Positions 55,283-64,000 of a DNA stretch of 64,000 bases are shown piece after piece. The stretch covers positions 124,001-188,000 of the IMG/VR virus record IMGVR_UViG_3300017971_000185; one strand, 5' to 3'. A program made the position numbers and the translations under genes. A model generated the notes under the pieces. It made no database searches. It was not told the origin of the DNA and saw only the letters and a list, made by a program, of their open reading frames with translations. Every line of letters begins with the position of its first letter. Position 1 is the first letter of the stretch.

Positions 55283-55584
55283 ATGGCTGCATCCCCGAAC
55301 GACAACCGGCTCTCCAGAGCAAGAAATTCATCGGCTTCCTGTTGGTCGAGGTTGGGTTCTTCGTGCTCATGGGCATGATGGTCTACCTTCAGGAGATCGA
55401 CACGCTGGCCGAGAATACAGCGTTCATTACGGTAGCCATCTGTGCGTCGTTCTTGGCAGTGGGTTTCATTCTCGGGCAGGCCAGTCTGGATCGGTTCGTT
55501 CGTGTTGCAGAGATCACCACGGGTCGTAAGGCTCCGGCTTCGCCTGCGCCCGACCCCGAGCCTGAAGATGACGAGGAAGCATGA
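55283..55584 (+). pseudogene. Two-TM membrane protein (holin-like), frameshifted at about 55305
   Basis: GAGGAGG RBS plus ATG 55283 reads MAASPND. Adding one base after AA at 55304-55305 gives KPALQSKKFIGFLLVEVGFF... in the frame of track ORF 55342..55584. Confidence 0.5.
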
Positions 55585-56033
55585 TCAACGAACGTCAGTT
55601 AGTCGAGCAGATCCGTAAGCTCCGTAAGCCCGCGACACGGGACGCTGGGCTTGCCTCTCTTCTCGATATGTTGGCAGACATCATGGCTCGGAGTGGGTGG
55701 CGTTCGCAGGCTGAGAGGGTTCGCCGCATCGGACAAGACATTCACGACGTAGCTGGCTTCGAGGAGCAAGACATCTCTGGCCTGGGCCATGGTTCTAGGC
55801 CGAAGCCAAGAGTCGGGAGTGTAGCCAATCAATTCTTGCAGCGAGAGGCTGGCGAAGGCGATCTTTCCAAGACTGTGCCCGCCGCCCTCAAGTGGATTGA
55901 TCGGCTGCAAAGGCATGCCCAGAAAGCCAAGCGTGAGTTGGCGCGTGGCGAGCCTGGCAGAGAGATGAATTGGTTTGTGGGCTTTCTGAAGGGTTATCGC
56001 GATACGGAGTGGTACGACCACTTCTTTGGATGA
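55581..56033 (+). CDS. Hypothetical protein carrying the VAxxFLxxxA motif
   Basis: GSVANQFLQREA; ATGA overlap. Confidence 0.6.
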   Translation: MINERQLVEQIRKLRKPATRDAGLASLLDMLADIMARSGWRSQAERVRRIGQDIHDVAGFEEQDISGLGHGSRPKPRVGSVANQFLQREAGEGDLSKTVPAALKWIDRLQRHAQKAKRELARGEPGREMNWFVGFLKGYRDTEWYDHFFG

Positions 56034-56045
56034 GAAGGAGATGCG

Positions 56046-56483
56046 ATGAAGAAGCTGTTTGTGCTGTTGGCAATCGCGGTCGCTCTGCCCGCGTGCAAGA
56101 AACCGATTGCGTCGATTCGCAATCCCGATGTGTACGCGAACGAGATCGACTTCAACAACATGGTGCAGGACCAAGCGGTTGCGCACCTACGCTACTGGAT
56201 CGAGGTCAACTGCTCCTGCAACGATGTGCCCGAATGGACTGGCGATCACGCTGAGCAGTGTGAGAAGACGGCCAAGCACATCGCCGTGGTCGAGGCCCGG
56301 CAGGAATATCACTCGCATCTCATGGAATTTAACGGGTCGCTACGGGAGGACAGGCCCCCAAAGGAGCCCCCAGAGGTCCCAGAAAGCACCACATTGTGTC
56401 CTGAGAAGGTTGCGCCCGAGCCTGAAAAAGAGCCTGAGAAGCCCACTGAGGAGACTCCAGAGGGCTCGGAAGGAGGTAGCTGA
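56046..56483 (+). CDS. Lipoprotein
   Basis: MKKLFVLLAIAVALPAC signal with lipobox Cys; AAGGAG RBS; Pro/Glu-rich tail. Confidence 0.75.
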   Translation: MKKLFVLLAIAVALPACKKPIASIRNPDVYANEIDFNNMVQDQAVAHLRYWIEVNCSCNDVPEWTGDHAEQCEKTAKHIAVVEARQEYHSHLMEFNGSLREDRPPKEPPEVPESTTLCPEKVAPEPEKEPEKPTEETPEGSEGGS

Positions 56484-56878
56484 TGTCAGTCGAAAAGTAC
56501 GCCAAGAAGCTGGCCGGGATGCTTCCAGCCCTGGGAGACAAGGGCGTGGAGGCGGTGGCCGCGGAGCTAGACAAACAAGCCGAGAATGCTGACGAGTCGT
56601 GGAAGAAATCGCTGCTCAATCTGGCGGCGGATTCTCTCGATCAGCATGGTCCCGAGGGCGTGAGGATGGCGTCAAAGGCCATCGAGGATCTGTTCGCCCA
56701 TAAGCAGGCGGGAACCAAACTTTCGGATCTCACGGATGACTTGGAAACCGCGAGCAACTTGCTTGCCGCGCTTCAGAACGCGGAGGCTGATCGCAAGACG
56801 GCGGCTCGGAGTTTTCTCAAAGCGCTCGGGCAAACGCTCGGGCAGATTACCAAGGGGTTCATCAAGGGCCTGTTGTAA
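56483..56878 (+). CDS. Hypothetical helical protein
   Basis: TGATG overlap; amphipathic helices. Confidence 0.65.
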   Translation: MSVEKYAKKLAGMLPALGDKGVEAVAAELDKQAENADESWKKSLLNLAADSLDQHGPEGVRMASKAIEDLFAHKQAGTKLSDLTDDLETASNLLAALQNAEADRKTAARSFLKALGQTLGQITKGFIKGLL

Positions 56879-56890
56879 GGAGGAAAGACG

Positions 56891-57256
56891 ATGGCAAGCA
56901 CCTTCCGTCCGCCCATGTATCGGGCCAAGAAGGGGAGGAAACTTCCCAAGTCGGCATACGAGGAACAGCCGGAGACCACAGTCGAAAAGCCAGCCGAGAA
57001 GCCAGCCGAGAAGCCAGCCGAGAAAAGCGCAAAGAAGCCTGGGGCGAAGGCTGAGAAGAAACCAGCCAAAAAGCCAGCCGAGAAGGCAGACAAGCCCAAG
57101 GCCAAGCGAAAGGTCAAGTGGGCGGCTGACTACACCAAGGAAGATCTCTACTGGATCGCCAAGAAGCTGGAGATTGACAAGATCAAGTCCCGCACTCCCA
57201 AGAGCGAGATGATCAAGATCCTTCGACGGCATCCGGGCGCAGAAGAGAAGAAGTAG
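56891..57256 (+). CDS. Lys/Ala/Pro-rich protein with C-terminal Rho-N/HeH-like motif
   Basis: (KPAE)n repeats, including a perfect 3x12-nt repeat at 56987-57022; YTKEDLYWIAKKLEI...KSEMIKIL. Confidence 0.65.
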   Translation: MASTFRPPMYRAKKGRKLPKSAYEEQPETTVEKPAEKPAEKPAEKSAKKPGAKAEKKPAKKPAEKADKPKAKRKVKWAADYTKEDLYWIAKKLEIDKIKSRTPKSEMIKILRRHPGAEEKK

Positions 57257-57266
57257 CGTTTGTGCT

Positions 57267-57695
57267 GTGCGCTCGCGGCTGACGGTAGCGAAGTACTTTC
57301 CTGATCGGCTGTACGGGTTTCTTCGCCAGGCCGATGGGTCTGAGGCGTTTTTCCATCTAGGGGACTTCAGTGTCGGAGCCGTGGACGAGCCTCCGCCGGT
57401 AATAGGGGAGGAAGTCGAGGCGGAGATAGAAGCTCGTGACGGCGAACGAGCCCCCAAGGCTGTGAAAGTCTCCAGGTTGCTCCCTCCAAAGCTGATTCAG
57501 GGCAAGGTGGACACCTTCAGTGAGCAAAAGGGGTGGGGTTTTGCCCTGTCAAACGAAGGCAAGTCCTACTACCTCCATCGCAGCGAAGTGCTGGGGGGGA
57601 AGCTTCCGATGGCGGGACAGCGGGTACGGTTCTATGGAGGGTTCAAGAACGGTCGCCTGCGGGCCTGCTACGTCACGATCGAGGACAGACGATGA
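57267..57695 (+). CDS. Tandem cold-shock-domain (OB-fold) protein
   Basis: YFPDRLYGFL..EAFFH and FSEQKGWGFA..YYLH (RNP1/RNP2 pairs), each followed by P..G..V. Confidence 0.85.
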   Translation: MRSRLTVAKYFPDRLYGFLRQADGSEAFFHLGDFSVGAVDEPPPVIGEEVEAEIEARDGERAPKAVKVSRLLPPKLIQGKVDTFSEQKGWGFALSNEGKSYYLHRSEVLGGKLPMAGQRVRFYGGFKNGRLRACYVTIEDRR

Positions 57696-58252
57696 GCGAC
57701 GATACCAACATCTTCGGAGGCAAGAACAAGAACGCTCTTTACACGCCGCTCAGCGAGGATGAGCAAGAAGTCCTTGAACGGTTGGCTACTGCGGGGTTTT
57801 ACAAGATCGTTGTCAAGGATTGGGGCTACATCGACAGGCCGAAGGTACGGTACGGAGATGCCCGGCTCGAATTCACGTGGAAGCTGCGGTTCGCGAAACC
57901 GGAACCGCCCGGTGTGCCTCTCCACTACCTCGATCTGGAGCTTTGGACCCACTCCGGCATCTTCTTGCTCGCGAATCGCCTGACGACGCAGATCAACGGA
58001 CAGCCGATGATTGCTGCTCGGGGCCTGGAGTACGACCTTGTCTGGGATATTCAACTTAAGCAGATCGATCCCGAGATCGTGAAGGCGATCAAGCCGGGGG
58101 CGGTAGGGCTCACGAGTCGATTGGGGAACATGCGTCTTTCGCAGGCTCAGAAGCAGCAACTTCACAATCTGCGCACGGGAGAGGCCAAGGTTCGGCAGAT
58201 GGATGCAGTTGCAGCCGCCGCAGCGGCCAGGAAAGCCTCTGAAGGGCGGTAA
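57692..58252 (+). CDS. Hypothetical protein
   Basis: GAGGA RBS; ATG 57692. Confidence 0.65.
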   Translation: MSDDTNIFGGKNKNALYTPLSEDEQEVLERLATAGFYKIVVKDWGYIDRPKVRYGDARLEFTWKLRFAKPEPPGVPLHYLDLELWTHSGIFLLANRLTTQINGQPMIAARGLEYDLVWDIQLKQIDPEIVKAIKPGAVGLTSRLGNMRLSQAQKQQLHNLRTGEAKVRQMDAVAAAAAARKASEGR

Positions 58253-58283
58253 GACCCCTATATATCGGCACAGGTGAGAGAGT

Positions 58284-58520
58284 ATGCCTCCCTCTGCCAA
58301 ACGGCTCGCAGAACGCTTCTTGCAGCGCAGCGCGGGCCTTGCCACCGATGAGCCCAATGGAAGGTTCGCTTCCATGGCTTGGGTGGCGGGCGTGAGGGCC
58401 GGGAAGCTCACTCGCGGTTGTGGGCTGATGCCCAATCCCCCCGAGGCTCGTCCCGAGGATTTCTACGAGGGCTACACGTGGGGATACATCAATGCTCCGA
58501 AGATTCGGGAGGTTGACTAA
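58284..58520 (+). CDS. Small hypothetical protein with N-terminal LAxRFLxxxA motif
   Basis: MPPSAKRLAERFLQRSA; after CCTATAT. Confidence 0.6.
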   Translation: MPPSAKRLAERFLQRSAGLATDEPNGRFASMAWVAGVRAGKLTRGCGLMPNPPEARPEDFYEGYTWGYINAPKIREVD

Positions 58521-59050
58521 TGGACCTTCGCTCCATGGCTCGTAAGGTAGCTTCGCGCTATCGGACTTCAGCTCTCATCAACAAGACAGTGAATGTTCCC
58601 GAGGTAGGCGATCAGGTTATTGATGTGTCTTTTGACCCTGAATTTGGAGTCGCCGATATCACCTTCAACTCGGCAAGAAAGATTGCTGTCCACATCGATT
58701 GGAATTGGGGACCCAAGACATCTGATGAAGTCTCGCCTGCGCCTCCCAAAACAGCCCAGATGACTCTGGGTATGATTGTTGCGGTCACGCCGACTGGAGT
58801 CATGCTCGGGGCTCATGACCGGATGGATCGCAGGTTTCTCGATCCGCGCCGATGGTTGCCTGTAGTTCGGAAAGCAGTGGGTCGTGAGGTTCCGTTCTTG
58901 CTTTACAAGCTGCGGAACGTACCCATCGAGTTGGCTGAACGCTATGCCGATGTTGGAACACCAGCGTCCACGTTTCCCAACGGTCGCGTCGCCTGGCAGA
59001 CGGCGAAGCGATATGCCGAGCCCAAGCCGTTTGCGGACTCCGAGGAGTAG
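58520..59050 (+). CDS. Hypothetical protein with N-terminal VAxRYxxxA motif
   Basis: MDLRSMARKVASRYRTSA; TAATG overlap. Confidence 0.65.
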   Translation: MDLRSMARKVASRYRTSALINKTVNVPEVGDQVIDVSFDPEFGVADITFNSARKIAVHIDWNWGPKTSDEVSPAPPKTAQMTLGMIVAVTPTGVMLGAHDRMDRRFLDPRRWLPVVRKAVGREVPFLLYKLRNVPIELAERYADVGTPASTFPNGRVAWQTAKRYAEPKPFADSEE

Positions 59051-59052
59051 GC

Positions 59053-62000
59053 ATGCCCAAGCTAGATCGAGGCTACACGCTGGGCGAGTTTCCGATCCCA
59101 CTGGAGCGCGATTACGTTCTCGGTCGCTTTGGAGATCGTACGGCAGCCAAGGATGATGACGATGAAGCTGTATCCGCCCAGCGACTTGCGGATCTCCTGA
59201 TTCTCTATACTGGCTATCGTATCCTCGGGCTAGCTCTGGAAGCTGAGCAACTACAGGAGACGAAAGCAAAGGACCACTTCAGAAAAGGAACACAGCTAGC
59301 AAGACGGTTCTTCAAGCAGTTTGCTCAGGGGTTTGACAACTACCTGGAGTCTCCTTCCGAAACGCTCCGTCTCAAGACGAAATTCAAGATGGCGGTTCGG
59401 AACAAGAGCTTTCTCAAGGGAGCCCCGGCTCGCGTCCGATACCTAGACATCCTTCTACCGCGCATGAGCGCTCGGATGCCGCTTCTGCGAAGCACGTTTG
59501 CTGGTCGCGCTTCCCTTGCGATCATGCGAATGGCACGGCTCGATCTCAAAGCGGAAGATCTGGCGACACGTGCCATCAATCTCAAGAATCTGGCCGCTAT
59601 TCCGCCGGTCTCGGGACTCCAGATGGGCCGCAAGTGGCTCATGGAGGCGGCCCGCATTGCAGGCGTCGAGCCTTCTGAGATGGAAGACACCGTCGCCGAT
59701 GCGGCGGTAGCTCGTGATCTTTCGGTACGGATCCGAGAGATCGACAACGAGCTTGCAGGATCGCGCAAAGGTACGAAGAAAGCGAAGGAGTTGGAGGCGG
59801 AGAGAGCTACGCTTCAAGAGACGCTCGATCTCGCCGTTGCATCTTCCTCCGATCCGCAGACCACGAAGGCAGCCGCAGTAGTCGAGCAGACGGAGCGCCT
59901 TGCTGGGAATGCCACTCCGCAAGGGCAGAAGGTCCAGTTGTCTCCCGATCAGGAGGCAGCGATGGTCGCTCGGGGGAAGGTTGTCGTGGCTGCTGGCGCG
60001 GGGAGCGGAAAATGCGTTCGAACAGATACTCTGATACAGACCAATGGGGGATTGATTGAGATTGGTTCTTTGTGCGAGGGCATGGATAAGGATTCCGATC
60101 AGTTTTGTGTCAAGCGCATCCATGGTCCTAAAGGCCCTGAGGACACATCTCATGTCTACTACAACGGCTTCAGCGCCACTCTTATCTTACGAACGAGTGC
60201 GGGCTTTGAGTTAGAGGCGACACCAAATCATCGTGTTTTCGCAATTCGAGATGGCGCGATTGTCTGGGTTCGTTTGGACGAGCTAACGGTAGACGACTAT
60301 GTGGCGATTGATCGTCGCCCTGGTTTGTTTGCATCGGACCCGTTCGTAAGAAAGGATGTAGAATTTCAGAGAGGGGGATTCCAAGGCACGCAAGGCGGTG
60401 GAGAGAACATTCCTGCGATGCTTACGCCTCAGGTGGCTCGTCTTTTGGGTTATCTGATTTCAGAGGGCTATGTGCGGCAAGATCAGTGGTCGTTTAGTTT
60501 CTCTACTTCTGATCCAGAGCAGGCAGAGCTGTATCGAGATTCCATGCGGGATCTCTTTGACTGGCAAGAGCATTTCGATGAGGGACGCTCAGAGACCCAA
60601 GAGGTTCAGGTTGTCTGTGAGGTTTGTCGTAGGGAGATTGTGGAAACTTTGATGGCCTTTGGTCTGAGGCGGGTAGGGGCGCATGAAAAGGAAATTCCGT
60701 TTGGTATTCTGAGGTCTCCCAAGCCGATCGTGCGAGATTTTTTGAGGGCCTTGTGGGACGGAGATGGCGGAGTCGAGAACAACGTCTTATCCTATTGCAC
60801 AGTAAGCGACAAGCTAGCGAGACAACTTCATGTTCTGATGTTGTCCTTTGGTGTTGTTGGCCGACTTCGGCCGAAGAAGACATCATCAGGCCATGCCTGG
60901 GTTCTTACTGTTTCTGGCGAGGCTGTGCCTGTCTTTGTCGAGGAAATTGGTTTCAACCTGACCCATAAGCAAGAAGCAGCCCTTGCTCTCGCAGACCGAG
61001 AATCGAACACGAATGTTGATGTTGTCCCTACTGTAGCGCAGAAATGCGATGCTGTGTTTCAAGCCTACAAAAGCGCGACTGGAATGGCCTTGGTTGATCA
61101 TCCGTCTTATGGCGCCTTCAAAGATTATCGAAAGGGACGCAGACGGCCATCTCACGATGCTCTATTGCGTTTCTTGCATGTGTATTCTCTCCCCGAAGAT
61201 CCCAACTGGCAAAGTCTTCATGGCTTGGTAAGAGAATGGTTCTACGATCCCGTTATTGCTATTGAGGACTCTGTTTCCTATACGGCTGACTTTGTTGTTC
61301 CCCAAAGCCAGGCTTTCAGCGGTGGCGGTTTCATCAATCACAACACGCGCGTGCTCGCGGCCAAAGTCGCCTACCACATGGAACAGGGACTTGGGCCACA
61401 GAACATCATCGCATGTTCGTTCACTCGCAAGTCCGCGGCTGAGCTAAAGGAGCGCATCAAGAAGTACGGCGGCGACCTGACGGGCAACGTCACAGCCGAG
61501 GCTGGCTTTGGGACTACGCACTACGTTGCTGGCGTCCTGGTTCTCGGCCAGTACGGCGGTAACAGACAACGGCCAGACGGGAAGTCGATCGAGGGATGGG
61601 TGCAGAACGACTTACTGCGTCTCGCGGTCGAGCAAGTCAAGATGAGCCCCGAGGGCGAACCGCCGCCGTTCGATCCCGAAGAGTCCTTCTTCCCCAAGAT
61701 GCTTCCCGAGCGGGAGAAGGATCTGGCCACTCCCGAGCCGCCCGAGGGTGCGCCTCCGCCAGTGGATGTTGGCGATCCCTTTGAGATGGCTATACGCGAT
61801 GCGTTGACCTACCACGAACGCATCCCTCGACGGCAGTTGCGGAATACGGGTTGGCTCGATTGGACCATCAACTTTCTGGAGGACATCCTTCGCCGCGGGG
61901 CAGATCCCACACGGCTCTCGCCCAAACAACGTGCTTCGGTGGAAAAGGCTCTCAATCGAGCCAAGGTAGAGTACGAGTTTCCAACGAGGACCGCGGGCTT

Positions 62001-64000
62001 CGACAAGTCTGCCGTCAACACCCAGAAGCAGATCAAGAAGCTGCGCGAGAAGTATCCGATTTGGTCAAATCGCCCGGCGAACATGTGGTTCAACATCGGA
62101 GCCACTGACCGGGATTTCCAAGACGGTGAGGCTCCCATTGCGCTTGGCCAACTCGGTCTCTACGTCAGCAACAACAAGGGCAGGCTCATTGCGCCGGGGA
62201 AAGCATACGGTACTGCACAAGCTGCACCGAAAGATCTGGCTGAAGATTTCGAGCAGGAGATGGAGGGTGAGCCCCAGGTAAACACCCGAACACTGGCAGC
62301 CGTGTATGGCGGCTACGAGTGGCTCAAGAACAACGAGGAGGAATTCAAGGGCGCGTTGGACATGGACGACGTGCTCATCTCCGCGAGTCGCTTGCTCATT
62401 GAGGATCCTCGTGCGTTGGCCCAGCTACAAGACCGAATCAAGTGTCTTTTAATCGACGAAGCACAAGACCTGAACGCTGCGCAGCATCTCTTGTTCGGCC
62501 TGATTGCTGGCTATGTCGATCCTGCTACGCAAGCGCCTCGCAAAGACGGGCAGATGACGGCGGATACGTTTGCCTTCATAGGCGACGACCGCCAGGCGAT
62601 TTACGCCTTTCGCGGAGCGTTGCCCGATCTCTTCATCGAGAAGTCAGATCTGGTCGAAGGCGGCGAAGGGTTCAACACCAAGACGTTGGATCTGAATTAC
62701 CGATCTGGTTCGGCCATTGTCGAGGCTGCCAACAACCTCATCAAGCACAACGAGAAGCAGATCCCGATGGTCTGCAAGGCCAACGTAGAGCGCAAAGGCA
62801 CAGGTGCCATCCAGCAGGTGACTCTGAAGACGCTAGAGGATTGTGCTGTCTACGCGGCAGAGCAGATCAAGGCGGCTACACAAGAGCTAGAGGATGTGAA
62901 GGACCCCGTCACCCAAGCGGCGAGCCCGTCAGACTTCGGTGTTGCGGTGCGCACGAACAAGGAAGCGTACCAGTACGGCATCGAGATGATCAAACGAGGG
63001 ATTCCGTTCAAGTCGAAGTACAACTTCTTCAAGGGTCCCGCAGTCAAGGCTCTGCTCAACCTGATGACGCTTGCCTCGACTGGCAAGAAGGATGTGCGGC
63101 GCATCAACCGGGCCGTGGTCGAGGGAGTCCGCGCACCTGATTGGGGACTTAGCGAAAAGACTCTCAAGACGCGTCTCACCGAGAAGGCAGGACGCGGGGC
63201 GGACTGGTTTGATTGGCTCAGCAAGGGCGGTTGGAAGGAGATCTATCGAGATCGCGAGATGCAGGAACGGCTGCACAAGTATGTGGGATTCTTGAAGGAG
63301 GTCTTTGATCTCAAGGAGACCGACAGCGACGGGGTTCTCAACTTCCTGACCAACTATCCCGGTCCCGAGGGCAACTTGATCGATGCGTTGGTCGAGAGAG
63401 TCAAGCAGTCGAAAGACGACATGGAGGACTTCGGGAAGCAGTACGAGGACACATCCGAGGAGAACCTACGCGAGTACGCCTCGGCTCCAATCCAGGTGCT
63501 TTTTGAGATCACCAAGACCTATCCCAAGCTGGACGATGCCGTTGCGTATCTCAACGAGCTTTACGAGATGAACGAGCGGCTTTCGAGCACGGACGATCCG
63601 ACTCGTAAGGACTACAAGGAAGATCTCGAAGCCGTGCAGATTGACACGGTGCATGGCTGGAAGGGTCTGGAGTGCAAGAATCTCTTTGTTCCGATGTGGG
63701 AGGGTCGCAGAGGCGGTTTCCCACACGGCAAAGCCGAGGACATGACTTCGGAGCGTCGCCTGGCCTACGTCGCCATCACGCGCGGTGAGGATAGCGTCAC
63801 TATCCTGCGTCCCGAGTTTGATGGCGCTGTCGATCGTGAGGGTCGGCCGATTCCCACTCGCCAGTCTCGTTTCGTGACCGAGGCGTGCATTCAGGACGTG
63901 CCGGCCTATGGGGAGTCGGTTGTCGTGGAAGATCCCGAGGAGCAGGGGCGGACGGCGCAGGAGAAGGAAGCGAAATTCCGTTTCACGGATGACGAGCTAG
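59053..64000 (+). CDS. uvrD: UvrD/PcrA-like SF1 helicase with long N-terminal extension; intein-containing; 3'-partial (not in ORF track)
   Basis: Read in frame from ATG 59053: LSPDQEAA..VVAAGAGSGK|intein|TRVL, CSFTRKSA.EL, LIDEAQD, IGDDRQAIYAFRGA, NYRS, VRTN, DTVHGWKGLE, ERRLAYVAITRG. The frame is open at 64000. Confidence 0.92.
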   Translation, partial: MPKLDRGYTLGEFPIPLERDYVLGRFGDRTAAKDDDDEAVSAQRLADLLILYTGYRILGLALEAEQLQETKAKDHFRKGTQLARRFFKQFAQGFDNYLESPSETLRLKTKFKMAVRNKSFLKGAPARVRYLDILLPRMSARMPLLRSTFAGRASLAIMRMARLDLKAEDLATRAINLKNLAAIPPVSGLQMGRKWLMEAARIAGVEPSEMEDTVADAAVARDLSVRIREIDNELAGSRKGTKKAKELEAERATLQETLDLAVASSSDPQTTKAAAVVEQTERLAGNATPQGQKVQLSPDQEAAMVARGKVVVAAGAGSGKCVRTDTLIQTNGGLIEIGSLCEGMDKDSDQFCVKRIHGPKGPEDTSHVYYNGFSATLILRTSAGFELEATPNHRVFAIRDGAIVWVRLDELTVDDYVAIDRRPGLFASDPFVRKDVEFQRGGFQGTQGGGENIPAMLTPQVARLLGYLISEGYVRQDQWSFSFSTSDPEQAELYRDSMRDLFDWQEHFDEGRSETQEVQVVCEVCRREIVETLMAFGLRRVGAHEKEIPFGILRSPKPIVRDFLRALWDGDGGVENNVLSYCTVSDKLARQLHVLMLSFGVVGRLRPKKTSSGHAWVLTVSGEAVPVFVEEIGFNLTHKQEAALALADRESNTNVDVVPTVAQKCDAVFQAYKSATGMALVDHPSYGAFKDYRKGRRRPSHDALLRFLHVYSLPEDPNWQSLHGLVREWFYDPVIAIEDSVSYTADFVVPQSQAFSGGGFINHNTRVLAAKVAYHMEQGLGPQNIIACSFTRKSAAELKERIKKYGGDLTGNVTAEAGFGTTHYVAGVLVLGQYGGNRQRPDGKSIEGWVQNDLLRLAVEQVKMSPEGEPPPFDPEESFFPKMLPEREKDLATPEPPEGAPPPVDVGDPFEMAIRDALTYHERIPRRQLRNTGWLDWTINFLEDILRRGADPTRLSPKQRASVEKALNRAKVEYEFPTRTAGFDKSAVNTQKQIKKLREKYPIWSNRPANMWFNIGATDRDFQDGEAPIALGQLGLYVSNNKGRLIAPGKAYGTAQAAPKDLAEDFEQEMEGEPQVNTRTLAAVYGGYEWLKNNEEEFKGALDMDDVLISASRLLIEDPRALAQLQDRIKCLLIDEAQDLNAAQHLLFGLIAGYVDPATQAPRKDGQMTADTFAFIGDDRQAIYAFRGALPDLFIEKSDLVEGGEGFNTKTLDLNYRSGSAIVEAANNLIKHNEKQIPMVCKANVERKGTGAIQQVTLKTLEDCAVYAAEQIKAATQELEDVKDPVTQAASPSDFGVAVRTNKEAYQYGIEMIKRGIPFKSKYNFFKGPAVKALLNLMTLASTGKKDVRRINRAVVEGVRAPDWGLSEKTLKTRLTEKAGRGADWFDWLSKGGWKEIYRDREMQERLHKYVGFLKEVFDLKETDSDGVLNFLTNYPGPEGNLIDALVERVKQSKDDMEDFGKQYEDTSEENLREYASAPIQVLFEITKTYPKLDDAVAYLNELYEMNERLSSTDDPTRKDYKEDLEAVQIDTVHGWKGLECKNLFVPMWEGRRGGFPHGKAEDMTSERRLAYVAITRGEDSVTILRPEFDGAVDREGRPIPTRQSRFVTEACIQDVPAYGESVVVEDPEEQGRTAQEKEAKFRFTDDEL
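60013..61344 (+). mobile_element. Intein (444 aa) with LAGLIDADG endonuclease in the helicase Walker A motif
   Basis: GAGSGK|CVRTDT ... ATPNHRV ... LLGYLISEG ... FLRALWDGDG ... FSGGGFINHN|TRVL. Confidence 0.93.

What the first reader, a model, noticed from the sequence alone, without database searches (positions are those of the whole stretch)
55581..59340. Shared (V/L)AxR(F/Y)xxxxA peptide in unrelated proteins: candidate capsid-targeting or processing signal
Seen: AKRLAERFLQRSA (58284 gene), ARKVASRYRTSA (58520 gene), GSVANQFLQREA (55581 gene) and TQLARRFFKQFA (helicase N-terminal extension) occur in otherwise unrelated proteins. Three are consecutive genes behind the CCTATAT motif. Established: T4 internal proteins use a short N-terminal capsid-targeting sequence removed by the prohead protease. 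Inference: a sorting signal that loads proteins, possibly including the helicase, into the head for co-injection.
Basis: partly seen in the sequence, partly recalled or inferred. Interest (0 to 1): 0.6.

Follow-up and report, generated by a model that had tools for sequence, protein, structure and literature searches.

The report
Shared end-tag peptide in megaphage proteins
A giant soil phage and its relatives put the same short helical peptide (core R-V-A-x-R-Y/F/W-L) on the very beginning or very end of many unrelated proteins. It behaves like an address label, most likely for loading proteins into the virus head, but no experiment yet shows where it sends them.

Summary
The window lies in a 497-kb phage genome whose capsid protein matches phage G gp27.

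A sharper motif is real: [S/A]-A-x-[R/K]-[V/I/L]-A-x-[R/K]-[Y/F/W/H]-L.
- A scoring matrix trained only on C-termini of a peptidase family from other phages finds 16 hits in this genome (0.15 in shuffles).
- It finds 11 in the 39%-identical relative LR745208 (0.2) and 14 in a third relative (0.27).
- It finds none in Tunturi_5, a cultured phage of the same GC content.
- 16 of the 20 best hits lie at extreme N- or C-termini.
- Codons vary synonymously, orthologues keep the tag, and the linkers that tether it vary from 5 to about 130 residues.

The 55581-gene and helicase peptides are not.

Function is unproven. Head loading is favoured because tagged giant enzymes sit between the portal and prohead-protease genes, and tagged genes share the CCTATA promoter-like element with tail genes. 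Rivals are a docking helix for the co-occurring C39-like peptidase, or another hub.

The parts
58257..58263 (+). CCTATAT, one copy of the CCTATA[GT] promoter-like element, 27 nt upstream of the 58284 gene
   Evidence: CCTATA is the most enriched upstream 6-mer: 20 intergenic regions against 1.7 expected. The same element precedes the tail terminator, sheath operon, baseplate and fibre genes, and three tag-bearing genes.
58284..58520 (+). 78-aa ORFan gene with an N-terminal tag
   Evidence: ORF. No Pfam hit. No homologue in LR745208.
58293..58325 (+). Tag, residues 4-14 (SAKRLAERFLQ)
   Evidence: Matrix score 12.1. Translation checked.
58520..59050 (+). 176-aa ORFan gene with an N-terminal tag; its start overlaps the previous stop (TAATG)
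   Evidence: No Pfam or PHROG hit. The only match is an identical IMG/VR contig.
58535..58567 (+). Tag, residues 6-16 (MARKVASRYRT)
   Evidence: Matrix score 12.1.
55815..55850 (+). Internal peptide GSVANQFLQREA of the 55581 gene: look-alike, not a tag
   Evidence: Residue 79 of 150. Best matrix score in the region is -2.2. No orthologue to test conservation.
59290..59325 (+). Internal peptide TQLARRFFKQFA of the helicase N-terminal extension: look-alike, not a tag
   Evidence: Residue 80 of 1681. Matrix score -3.0. The orthologue in LR745208 aligns only from residue 1143 onward, so the extension is not conserved.
59053..64000 (+). UvrD-like helicase gene with an intein. It runs off the window and ends at genome position 188098. 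The next gene, at genome 188080, carries a C-terminal tag.
   Evidence: Pfam Intein_splicing and UvrD-helicase hits. Gene call. The C-terminal tag of the next gene scores 9.6.

Best explanation
The peptide is a portable terminal sorting tag. It is an amphipathic, basic helix of about 11 residues, with core R-V-A-x-R-[Y/F/W]-L, often preceded by S-A-x and followed by K/R. It is attached by a flexible linker to either end of many unrelated proteins of this megaphage clade.

Most likely it docks these proteins onto a conserved component of the assembling prohead (shell, core or portal region). Enzymes and small proteins would then be enclosed in the very large phage-G-type head and delivered with the DNA. 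This is analogous to the T4 capsid targeting sequence and to encapsulin cargo-loading peptides.

Shown: the tag exists, is selected as a peptide, is terminal, is tethered, and is conserved across a large clade. Inferred: that the receptor is in the head, and that the cargo is co-injected.
For: It is a real, selected motif.
- The negative control, Tunturi_5, has the same GC content (58.4%) and scores 0.
- All codon families are used at the motif.

It is terminal and tethered.
- In this genome 8 hits are N-terminal, 8 C-terminal and 4 internal.
- The C39-like peptidase family has 321 homologues; 120 were read. The catalytic domain ends at a conserved DGRQV-x-AS. A linker of 5 to about 130 variable residues follows, and the tag sits at the extreme C-terminus in 74 of the 120.
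- In the AF2 model the tag is a separate terminal helix outside the confident core.

It is conserved in position in unrelated families. These are the orthologues of g30269, g393624, g433579, g30698 (both ends), g400329, and g450981 residue 287, which matches the N-terminus of a separate protein in LR745208.

It is linked to the head.
- The gene order is TerL, portal, three giant proteins (g450981, g455504, g458548), prohead protease, acidic scaffold-like protein, decoration-like protein, MCP. That interval is where T4 keeps its prohead-core genes (own knowledge).
- g450981 starts with the tag. In relative G002 the orthologues of g455504 and g458548 start with it.
- 3 of 16 genes directly behind CCTATA[GT], the element that also precedes tail genes, carry tags. 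0.47 are expected (P = 0.012). None of the roughly 50 GTAAACTT...GCGTAGA elements directly precedes a tagged gene.
- The MCP is 89.6% identical between two genomes whose shared proteins have a median identity of 39%.
- Particle proteomics of phage G, which shares the MCP family, reports many non-structural enzymes in particles (PMC12484599).
- The cargo mix of enzymes plus small acidic proteins resembles T4 internal proteins (PMC3012670).
Against: - There are no virion proteomics for any tag-bearing phage.
- Tunturi_5 (MCP 48% identical) has no tag, and the one narrow DNA pattern tried on phage G (MCP 38% identical) gave a single match. The tag is therefore not a general feature of this capsid family.
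- No conserved cleavage motif flanks the tag (inspection).
- Several tagged genes (g433579, g437969) lie next to replication genes.
- CCTATA[GT] also precedes an Mre11-like gene and a helicase gene, so it may be a middle rather than a strictly late element.
- The scaffold-like protein uses a different conserved C-terminal motif.
- The receptor is unidentified.
Confidence: 0.45

Rival explanations
1. The tag is the docking helix recognised by the phage's own C39-like (double-glycine-type) cysteine peptidase. It would mark proteins for processing or activation rather than for transport. This could also coexist with head loading, with the peptidase removing tags inside the prohead.
For: - The peptidase has the fold of PCAT1, ComA and LahT peptidase domains. 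Those domains bind an amphipathic leader helix (own knowledge).
- Its Q, C, H and D positions are conserved.
- It is present in this genome and in LR745208, which have tags.
- No homologue was found in phage G or Tunturi_5. Tunturi_5 has no tags, and the one pattern tried on phage G gave a single match.
Against: - No conserved GG, GA or GS site follows N-terminal tags or precedes C-terminal ones.
- C-terminal tags end the protein, so cleavage there would release only the tag.
- The peptidase carries the tag itself.
- The co-occurrence rests on four genomes, and the tool warns that the negative search is not proof of absence.
Confidence: 0.15
2. The tag recruits proteins to a different conserved hub. 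Candidates are the replisome, the transcription machinery, a phage cytoskeletal or compartment protein, or a host protein.
For: - Some tagged genes sit in or beside the replication module (RecD2, RecA, clamp loader, sigma-like protein).
- Hub-binding motifs such as clamp-binding peptides also occur at either terminus (own knowledge).
- About 100 proteins share the phyletic pattern of being present in this genome and LR745208 but absent from Tunturi_5.
Against: - The polymerase, ligase-type and recombination proteins do not carry the tag.
- The cargo includes a peptidase and small acidic ORFans.
- No DnaN-type clamp domain was detected.
- The tagged giant proteins are in the head module.
Confidence: 0.22
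3. The tag is a degron that times the turnover of these proteins by an AAA+ protease.
For: Protease recognition signals lie at protein ends. Many C-terminal copies finish with K/R-rich tails.
Against: - The same oriented helix is used at both ends, whereas known ClpX N- and C-signals differ (own knowledge).
- No ClpP is encoded.
- The strong conservation of V-A and the aromatic-L pair suggests a structured pocket.
Confidence: 0.07
4. The tag is a generic membrane- or nucleic-acid-binding amphipathic basic helix.
For: It has a basic amphipathic helix character, is predicted helical, and sits at protein ends like MinD or FtsA membrane-targeting helices (own knowledge).
Against: - Position-specific conservation is too strict, with invariant A and near-invariant V and R in 71 distinct copies.
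- The hydrophobic face is small.
- The tag is absent from Tunturi_5, which has the same composition.
Confidence: 0.07
5. The motif is a chance or compositional artefact, or a translated DNA element at gene boundaries.
For: Two of the four peptides are background.
Against: - Shuffle controls in three genomes, training on independent sequences, and the Tunturi_5 control.
- Synonymous codon diversity.
- Positional conservation in orthologues at 30-70% identity.
Confidence: 0.02

Closest known systems
T4 capsid targeting sequence (CTS) of internal proteins IPI-III and Alt
   Same: A short shared peptide is the only similarity among otherwise diverse proteins, both small anti-defence-like proteins and enzymes (PMC3012670). 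The tagged giant proteins here lie between the portal and prohead-protease genes, the interval that holds prohead-core genes in T4 (own knowledge).
   Different: - The T4 CTS is N-terminal only and is cut off after a hydrophobic-x-E site by the prohead protease.
- Here half the copies are C-terminal and no cleavage consensus is seen.
- There is no sequence resemblance.
- Loading into the head is not shown.
Encapsulin cargo-loading peptides and microcompartment encapsulation peptides
   Same: A short conserved terminal peptide sits on a variable flexible linker, at the N- or C-terminus, and directs unrelated enzymes into a protein shell. For encapsulins the shell is HK97-fold, like this MCP (own knowledge; architecture seen).
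   Different: - The consensus is different.
- The putative shell here is a DNA-filled phage head.
- Binding to the shell could not be established.
Double-glycine leader peptides recognised by C39 peptidase domains (PCAT1, ComA, LahT)
   Same: An amphipathic helix would be recognised by a C39-fold peptidase. Such a peptidase co-occurs with the tag and has that fold.
   Different: - No GG-type cleavage site is present.
- The tags also occur at C-termini and on the peptidase itself.
- No ABC exporter context is present.
P22-type scaffolding protein C-terminal coat-binding helix-turn-helix
   Same: A basic terminal helical element docks onto the inner shell surface during procapsid assembly (own knowledge).
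   Different: - The scaffold-like protein of this clade ends with a different conserved motif (L-S-x-L-W-x-x-A-P-D-V-S).
- Its internal helix does not match the tag matrix (median score -8.3).

Membership tests
T4-type capsid targeting sequence | Short shared peptide on otherwise unrelated proteins | tested here: met
   At least 16 proteins per genome carry it. They include a C39 peptidase, a LigT/PolyA_pol giant protein and ORFans of 53-694 aa.
T4-type capsid targeting sequence | Strictly N-terminal position | tested here: not met
   8 N-terminal, 8 C-terminal and 4 internal among the 20 best hits.
T4-type capsid targeting sequence | Adjacent prohead-protease cleavage site (hydrophobic-x-E) that removes the signal | tested here: not met
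   No recurrent residue pattern follows N-terminal tags or precedes C-terminal ones (by inspection). Actual cleavage cannot be tested here.
T4-type capsid targeting sequence | Tagged proteins are present in virions, and the tag is sufficient to load a foreign protein | not testable with these tools
   No cultured tag-positive phage exists. The cultured relative Tunturi_5 has no tag, and one narrow DNA pattern tried on phage G gave a single match.
Encapsulin / microcompartment cargo-loading peptide | Conserved terminal peptide separated from the cargo domain by a variable linker | tested here: met
   In the peptidase family, linkers of 5 to about 130 non-conserved residues precede the tag. The tag helix lies outside the confident core.
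Encapsulin / microcompartment cargo-loading peptide | Peptide binds the inner face of the shell protein | not testable with these tools
   The one complex prediction available gave no verdict (see Tried and rejected).
Double-glycine leader / C39 peptidase substrate | GG, GA or GS cleavage site a fixed distance after the helix | tested here: not met
   No conserved double-glycine site is present, and C-terminal tags are followed by 0-6 residues.
Double-glycine leader / C39 peptidase substrate | Co-occurrence with a C39-fold peptidase | tested here: met
   The peptidase is present in this genome and in LR745208. It was not found in phage G or Tunturi_5. Fold. Only four genomes were compared.
Tat (twin-arginine) signal peptide | N-terminal S/T-R-R-x-F-L-K followed by a hydrophobic stretch and a signal-peptidase site | tested here: not met
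   No hydrophobic stretch follows the tag. Many copies have a single R at the twin-arginine position. Half of the copies are C-terminal.
Sliding-clamp binding motif | Carried by polymerases, ligases and repair enzymes; a clamp is encoded or available | tested here: inconclusive
   No DnaN domain was found, but a clamp loader is present. The polymerase and recombination proteins lack the tag.

The most novel reading that the evidence does not exclude
A universal, position-independent cargo-loading tag for a phage-G-type capsid. On this reading, any protein carrying R-V-A-x-R-Y-L at either end is enclosed and co-injected.

A very large clade of soil megaphages would then deliver a whole enzyme kit with its DNA: a polyA/CCA-adding enzyme, LigT-like and topoisomerase-I-like modules, a cysteine peptidase and small acidic proteins. 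The clade is marked by MCPs at least 88% identical, found on contigs up to 528 kb.

The C39-like peptidase could be the enzyme that frees the cargo inside the head.
Probability: 0.35. Interest if true: 0.85.

Novelty: new variant of a known kind. Interest (0 to 1): 0.68.

Why it matters
If the tag is a head-loading signal, it would be the first such signal for megaphages. Unlike the T4 CTS, it would work from either protein end. It would explain how huge capsids carry many enzymes, allow injected proteins (likely early takeover and anti-defence factors) to be predicted from sequence alone across thousands of uncultured soil phages, and offer a short portable tag for packaging foreign proteins in large capsids.

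Even if the receptor lies elsewhere, the tag defines a clade-wide interaction network of about 15-20 proteins per genome that can be read directly from sequence.

Tried and rejected
At chance level.
- **CCTATAT as a frequent motif.** Only 7 plus-strand and 2 minus-strand copies exist. The useful element is CCTATA[GT].
- **Complex prediction.** I ran MCP (alignment A1), scaffold-like protein residues 1-190 (A2) and a 53-aa tagged protein. The result was no verdict, score 0.25 against a mark of 0.32, and controls were not run. This is not evidence either way.
- **The tag mimics a helix of the scaffold-like protein.** Rejected: matrix median score -8.3.
- **Degron for a phage ClpP.** No ClpP family match.
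- **DnaN clamp.** No match.
- **Tag in phage G.** One match to a degenerate DNA pattern for the K/R-rich form, with reversed-pattern control 0 and my rough expectation about 0.65. No enrichment shown, but the pattern is narrow.
- **Orthologues of the 58284, 58520 and 55581 genes.** None in LR745208, and for 58520 none in five IMG/VR fragments. Only identical contigs were found, so conservation of the window's own two tags could not be tested.
- **Handle searches of loci L052 and L053.** These records are not held.
- **Phage G and Tunturi_5 homologues of tagged proteins.** Only the CCA-adding domain of g450981 is shared, so the phage G proteomics cannot be mapped onto tagged proteins.
- **Caveat on gene calls.** Gene calls are my own crude codon-score caller. 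Some "internal" hits in LR745208 are probably N-terminal after start correction.
- **Not used.** The reads tools were not used.
Full report
**What the sequence is.** The window is bases 124001-188000 of a single 497,194-bp virus record with GC 0.577. My own codon-score gene caller gives 573 genes, mostly on the plus strand.
- The major capsid protein (genome 470046-470918) matches phage G gp27 (PDB 6WKK, E = 7e-62) and PHROG 2522.
- By tblastn the MCP is 89.6% identical to the uncultured phage LR745208 (485 kb), 48.5% to the cultured Tunturiibacter phage Tunturi_5 (309 kb, GC 58.4%, Acidobacteriota host; PMC11924767) and 38% to phage G.
- Only 140 of 573 proteins have a homologue in LR745208, at a median identity of 39%.
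- The MCP clade is very large: 2030 database proteins, of which the best 120 are at least 88% identical, on contigs up to 528 kb.

**The observation.** The three genes at 58284, 58520 and 59053 are consecutive behind CCTATAT.

The stated consensus fits only two of the four peptides. It occurs twice in the proteome, against 0.8 in residue shuffles.

**What is really there.** Listing all [VLI]A.[RKQ][FYW] sites showed a sharper peptide at the extreme ends of many proteins. Four lines of evidence support it.

1. *Enrichment and replication.*
   - The regex [KRQ][VLI]A.[RQ][FYW] gives 6 N-terminal, 5 C-terminal and 5 internal hits, against 0.36, 0.28 and 2.7 in shuffles.
   - With L added, there are 9 hits against 0.28 here and 5 against 0.23 in LR745208.
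   - To avoid post-hoc fitting, I trained an 11-column matrix only on C-termini of peptidase homologues from other metagenomic phages. I then scanned whole proteomes (table below).
   - Of the 20 best hits here, 8 are N-terminal, 8 C-terminal and 4 internal. End zones hold 19% of residues, so P is 1e-8.

| Genome | Matrix score threshold | Hits | Shuffle mean |
|---|---|---|---|
| This genome | 10 | 16 | 0.15 |
| LR745208 | 10 | 11 | 0.2 |
| G002 (141-kb IMG/VR relative, median 50% identity) | 8 | 14 | 0.27 |
| Tunturi_5 (same GC content) | 10 | 0 | 0.1 |

2. *Selection acts on the peptide.* Every codon family for R, V, A and L is used at the motif, so this is not a DNA element.

3. *The tag is conserved in position in unrelated families.*
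   - Orthologue pairs at 30-70% identity keep the tag at the same end: g30269, the C39-like peptidase g393624, g433579, g400329, and g30698 at both ends.
   - The internal copy at residue 287 of g450981 aligns with the N-terminus of a separate protein in LR745208.
   - An internal copy in a fused 1119-aa protein of another relative falls where LR745208 ends a 508-aa protein with a tag. Internal copies therefore mark old gene boundaries.

4. *The tag is tethered.*
   - The peptidase has 321 close homologues.
   - In the 120 that I read, the catalytic domain ends at a conserved DGRQV-x-AS. A linker of 5 to about 130 residues of unrelated sequence follows.
   - In 74 of the 120 the tag is within the last 28 residues, usually ending in K/R.
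   - In the AF2 model (pLDDT 90) the tag is a terminal helix, residues 182-188, with pLDDT about 68, outside the core.

The 58284 and 58520 peptides each score 12.1; only 10 of 140,864 windows reach 12. The 55581-gene and helicase peptides score -2.2 and -3.0, are internal, and have no conserved counterpart. Two are tags and two are look-alikes. The helicase is not a candidate cargo on this evidence, but the gene after it (genome 188080) ends with a tag.

**Who carries the tag.**
- A C39-like cysteine peptidase with the fold of PCAT1, ComA and LahT and conserved Q, C, H and D positions.
- A 1510-aa protein with LigT-like and polyA/CCA-adding domains.
- Other giant proteins of the same gene block.
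- ORFans of 53-694 aa, some very acidic.

**Clues to function.**
- *Gene order.* Using Tunturi_5 annotation and PHROGs, the order is TerL (g444611), portal with intein (g447475), g450981, g455504, g458548, g463129, prohead protease with two inteins (g463663), an acidic scaffold-like protein (g467645), a decoration-like protein and the MCP. Phage G has the same portal ... protease ... decoration-MCP order.
- *Tags in the head module.* The three giant proteins therefore lie in the interval where T4 encodes prohead-core proteins (own knowledge). g450981 starts with the tag. In G002 the orthologues of g455504 and g458548 start with it. In another relative these modules are fused into a 3381-aa PolyA_pol plus Topoisom_I protein just before the head genes.
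- *Promoter-like elements.* Two classes are enriched upstream of genes.
  - CCTATA[GT] precedes the tail terminator, sheath operon, baseplate and fibre genes, and three tagged genes. That is 3 of 16 against 0.47 expected (P = 0.012).
  - The bipartite GTAAACTT-N13-GCGTAGAG has about 50 copies before small, poorly conserved genes. None directly precedes a tagged gene.
- *Phage G proteomics.* Particle proteomics of phage G reports many replication and repair enzymes in particles (PMC12484599).
- *T4 precedent.* T4 shows that a short shared signal can load diverse defence-related proteins into the prohead core (PMC3012670).

Together these favour a head-loading tag, but all of this evidence is circumstantial.

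**Against, and alternatives.**
- The tag is absent from Tunturi_5, and the one narrow DNA pattern tried on phage G gave a single match. It is therefore clade-specific and not tied to the capsid fold.
- No cleavage motif is seen next to the tag.
- Some tagged genes adjoin replication genes.
- CCTATA[GT] also precedes a nuclease gene and a helicase gene.
- The C39-like peptidase co-occurs with the tag in the four genomes compared, and its fold binds amphipathic leader helices. The tag could therefore be its docking site, alone or as part of a load-then-release scheme.
- A different hub, a degron and a generic amphipathic helix are less likely, for the reasons given under the rivals.
- The only complex prediction available gave no verdict, and it counts neither way.

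**Comparison and novelty.** The tag works like the T4 CTS and like encapsulin or microcompartment cargo peptides: a short, portable terminal signal on a linker. It fails the membership tests for the T4 CTS (not N-terminal only, no cleavage site), for double-glycine leaders and for Tat signals. Literature searches found no description of such a tag in megaphages. I rate it a new variant of a known kind. Confidence is high that it is a real sorting or docking tag (about 0.9) and moderate that the destination is the head (about 0.45).

Noticed in passing
window 16731, 22318, 35193, 36049, 52199 (genome 140731, 146318, 159193, 160049, 176199) and about 45 more genome-wide: A bipartite promoter-like element, GTAAACTT, about 13 nt, then GCGTAGAG, lies 10-50 nt before small, poorly conserved genes. 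It is probably the early promoter class.
   Followed up: partly
window 9171, 25913, 58257 (genome 133171, 149913, 182257) and about 13 more: CCTATA[GT] is the most enriched upstream 6-mer. It stands before tail, baseplate and fibre genes and some replication genes. One copy reads CCTATAGGGAG, reminiscent of T7-type promoters.
   Followed up: partly
window 59053-64000; also genome 447475-450942, 463663-467778, 411285-414929: The genome is rich in inteins. The UvrD-like helicase, the portal, the prohead protease (two insertions) and the RecD2-like helicase all carry intein or LAGLIDADG insertions that are absent from the LR745208 orthologues.
   Followed up: partly
L029:10046-10918 (genome 470046-470918): The MCP is 89.6% identical to LR745208, while the median shared protein is 39% identical. 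The best 120 of 2030 database homologues are at least 88% identical. This conservation is unusually strong for a capsid protein.
   Followed up: partly
L029:7645-9156 (genome 467645-469156): An acidic, low-complexity scaffold-like protein has conserved proline-rich N-terminal motifs. Its conserved C-terminal motif (L-S-x-L-W-x-x-A-P-D-V-S) is a likely coat-binding end, and some homologues hit EF-hand families. The true start is probably M43.
   Followed up: partly
genome 450981-463119 (L007, L028); relatives L052, L053: Giant multi-enzyme proteins (LigT-like, PolyA_pol/CCA-adding, HAD, Topoisom_I) lie between the portal and protease genes. They are fused into one 3381-aa protein in a 520-kb relative.
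   Followed up: partly
genome 59773-60822: A 349-aa protein in the tail gene block is 59.5% identical to LR745208 and absent from Tunturi_5. By eye only, it has an actin/Hsp70-like GxDxGT start motif. This was not tested.
   Followed up: no
window 56046-56483: A 145-aa protein has a lipoprotein-type signal (hydrophobic stretch ending L-P-A-C). It has a homologue in LR745208, and together with the Tunturi_5 link this suggests a bacterial host with lipoprotein processing.
   Followed up: no
window 57267-57695: A 142-aa protein matches the cold-shock DNA-binding domain in two stretches (Pfam CSD, E = 5.5e-10). It overlaps the longest-ORF start of the next gene, so that start is probably wrong.
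   Followed up: no
genome 288238-288600, 313898-314170, 493298-494410: Short stretches similar to the MCP occur inside other ORFs. They may be capsid-gene fragments or paralogues. Tunturi_5 is also annotated with two major head and two portal genes.
   Followed up: no
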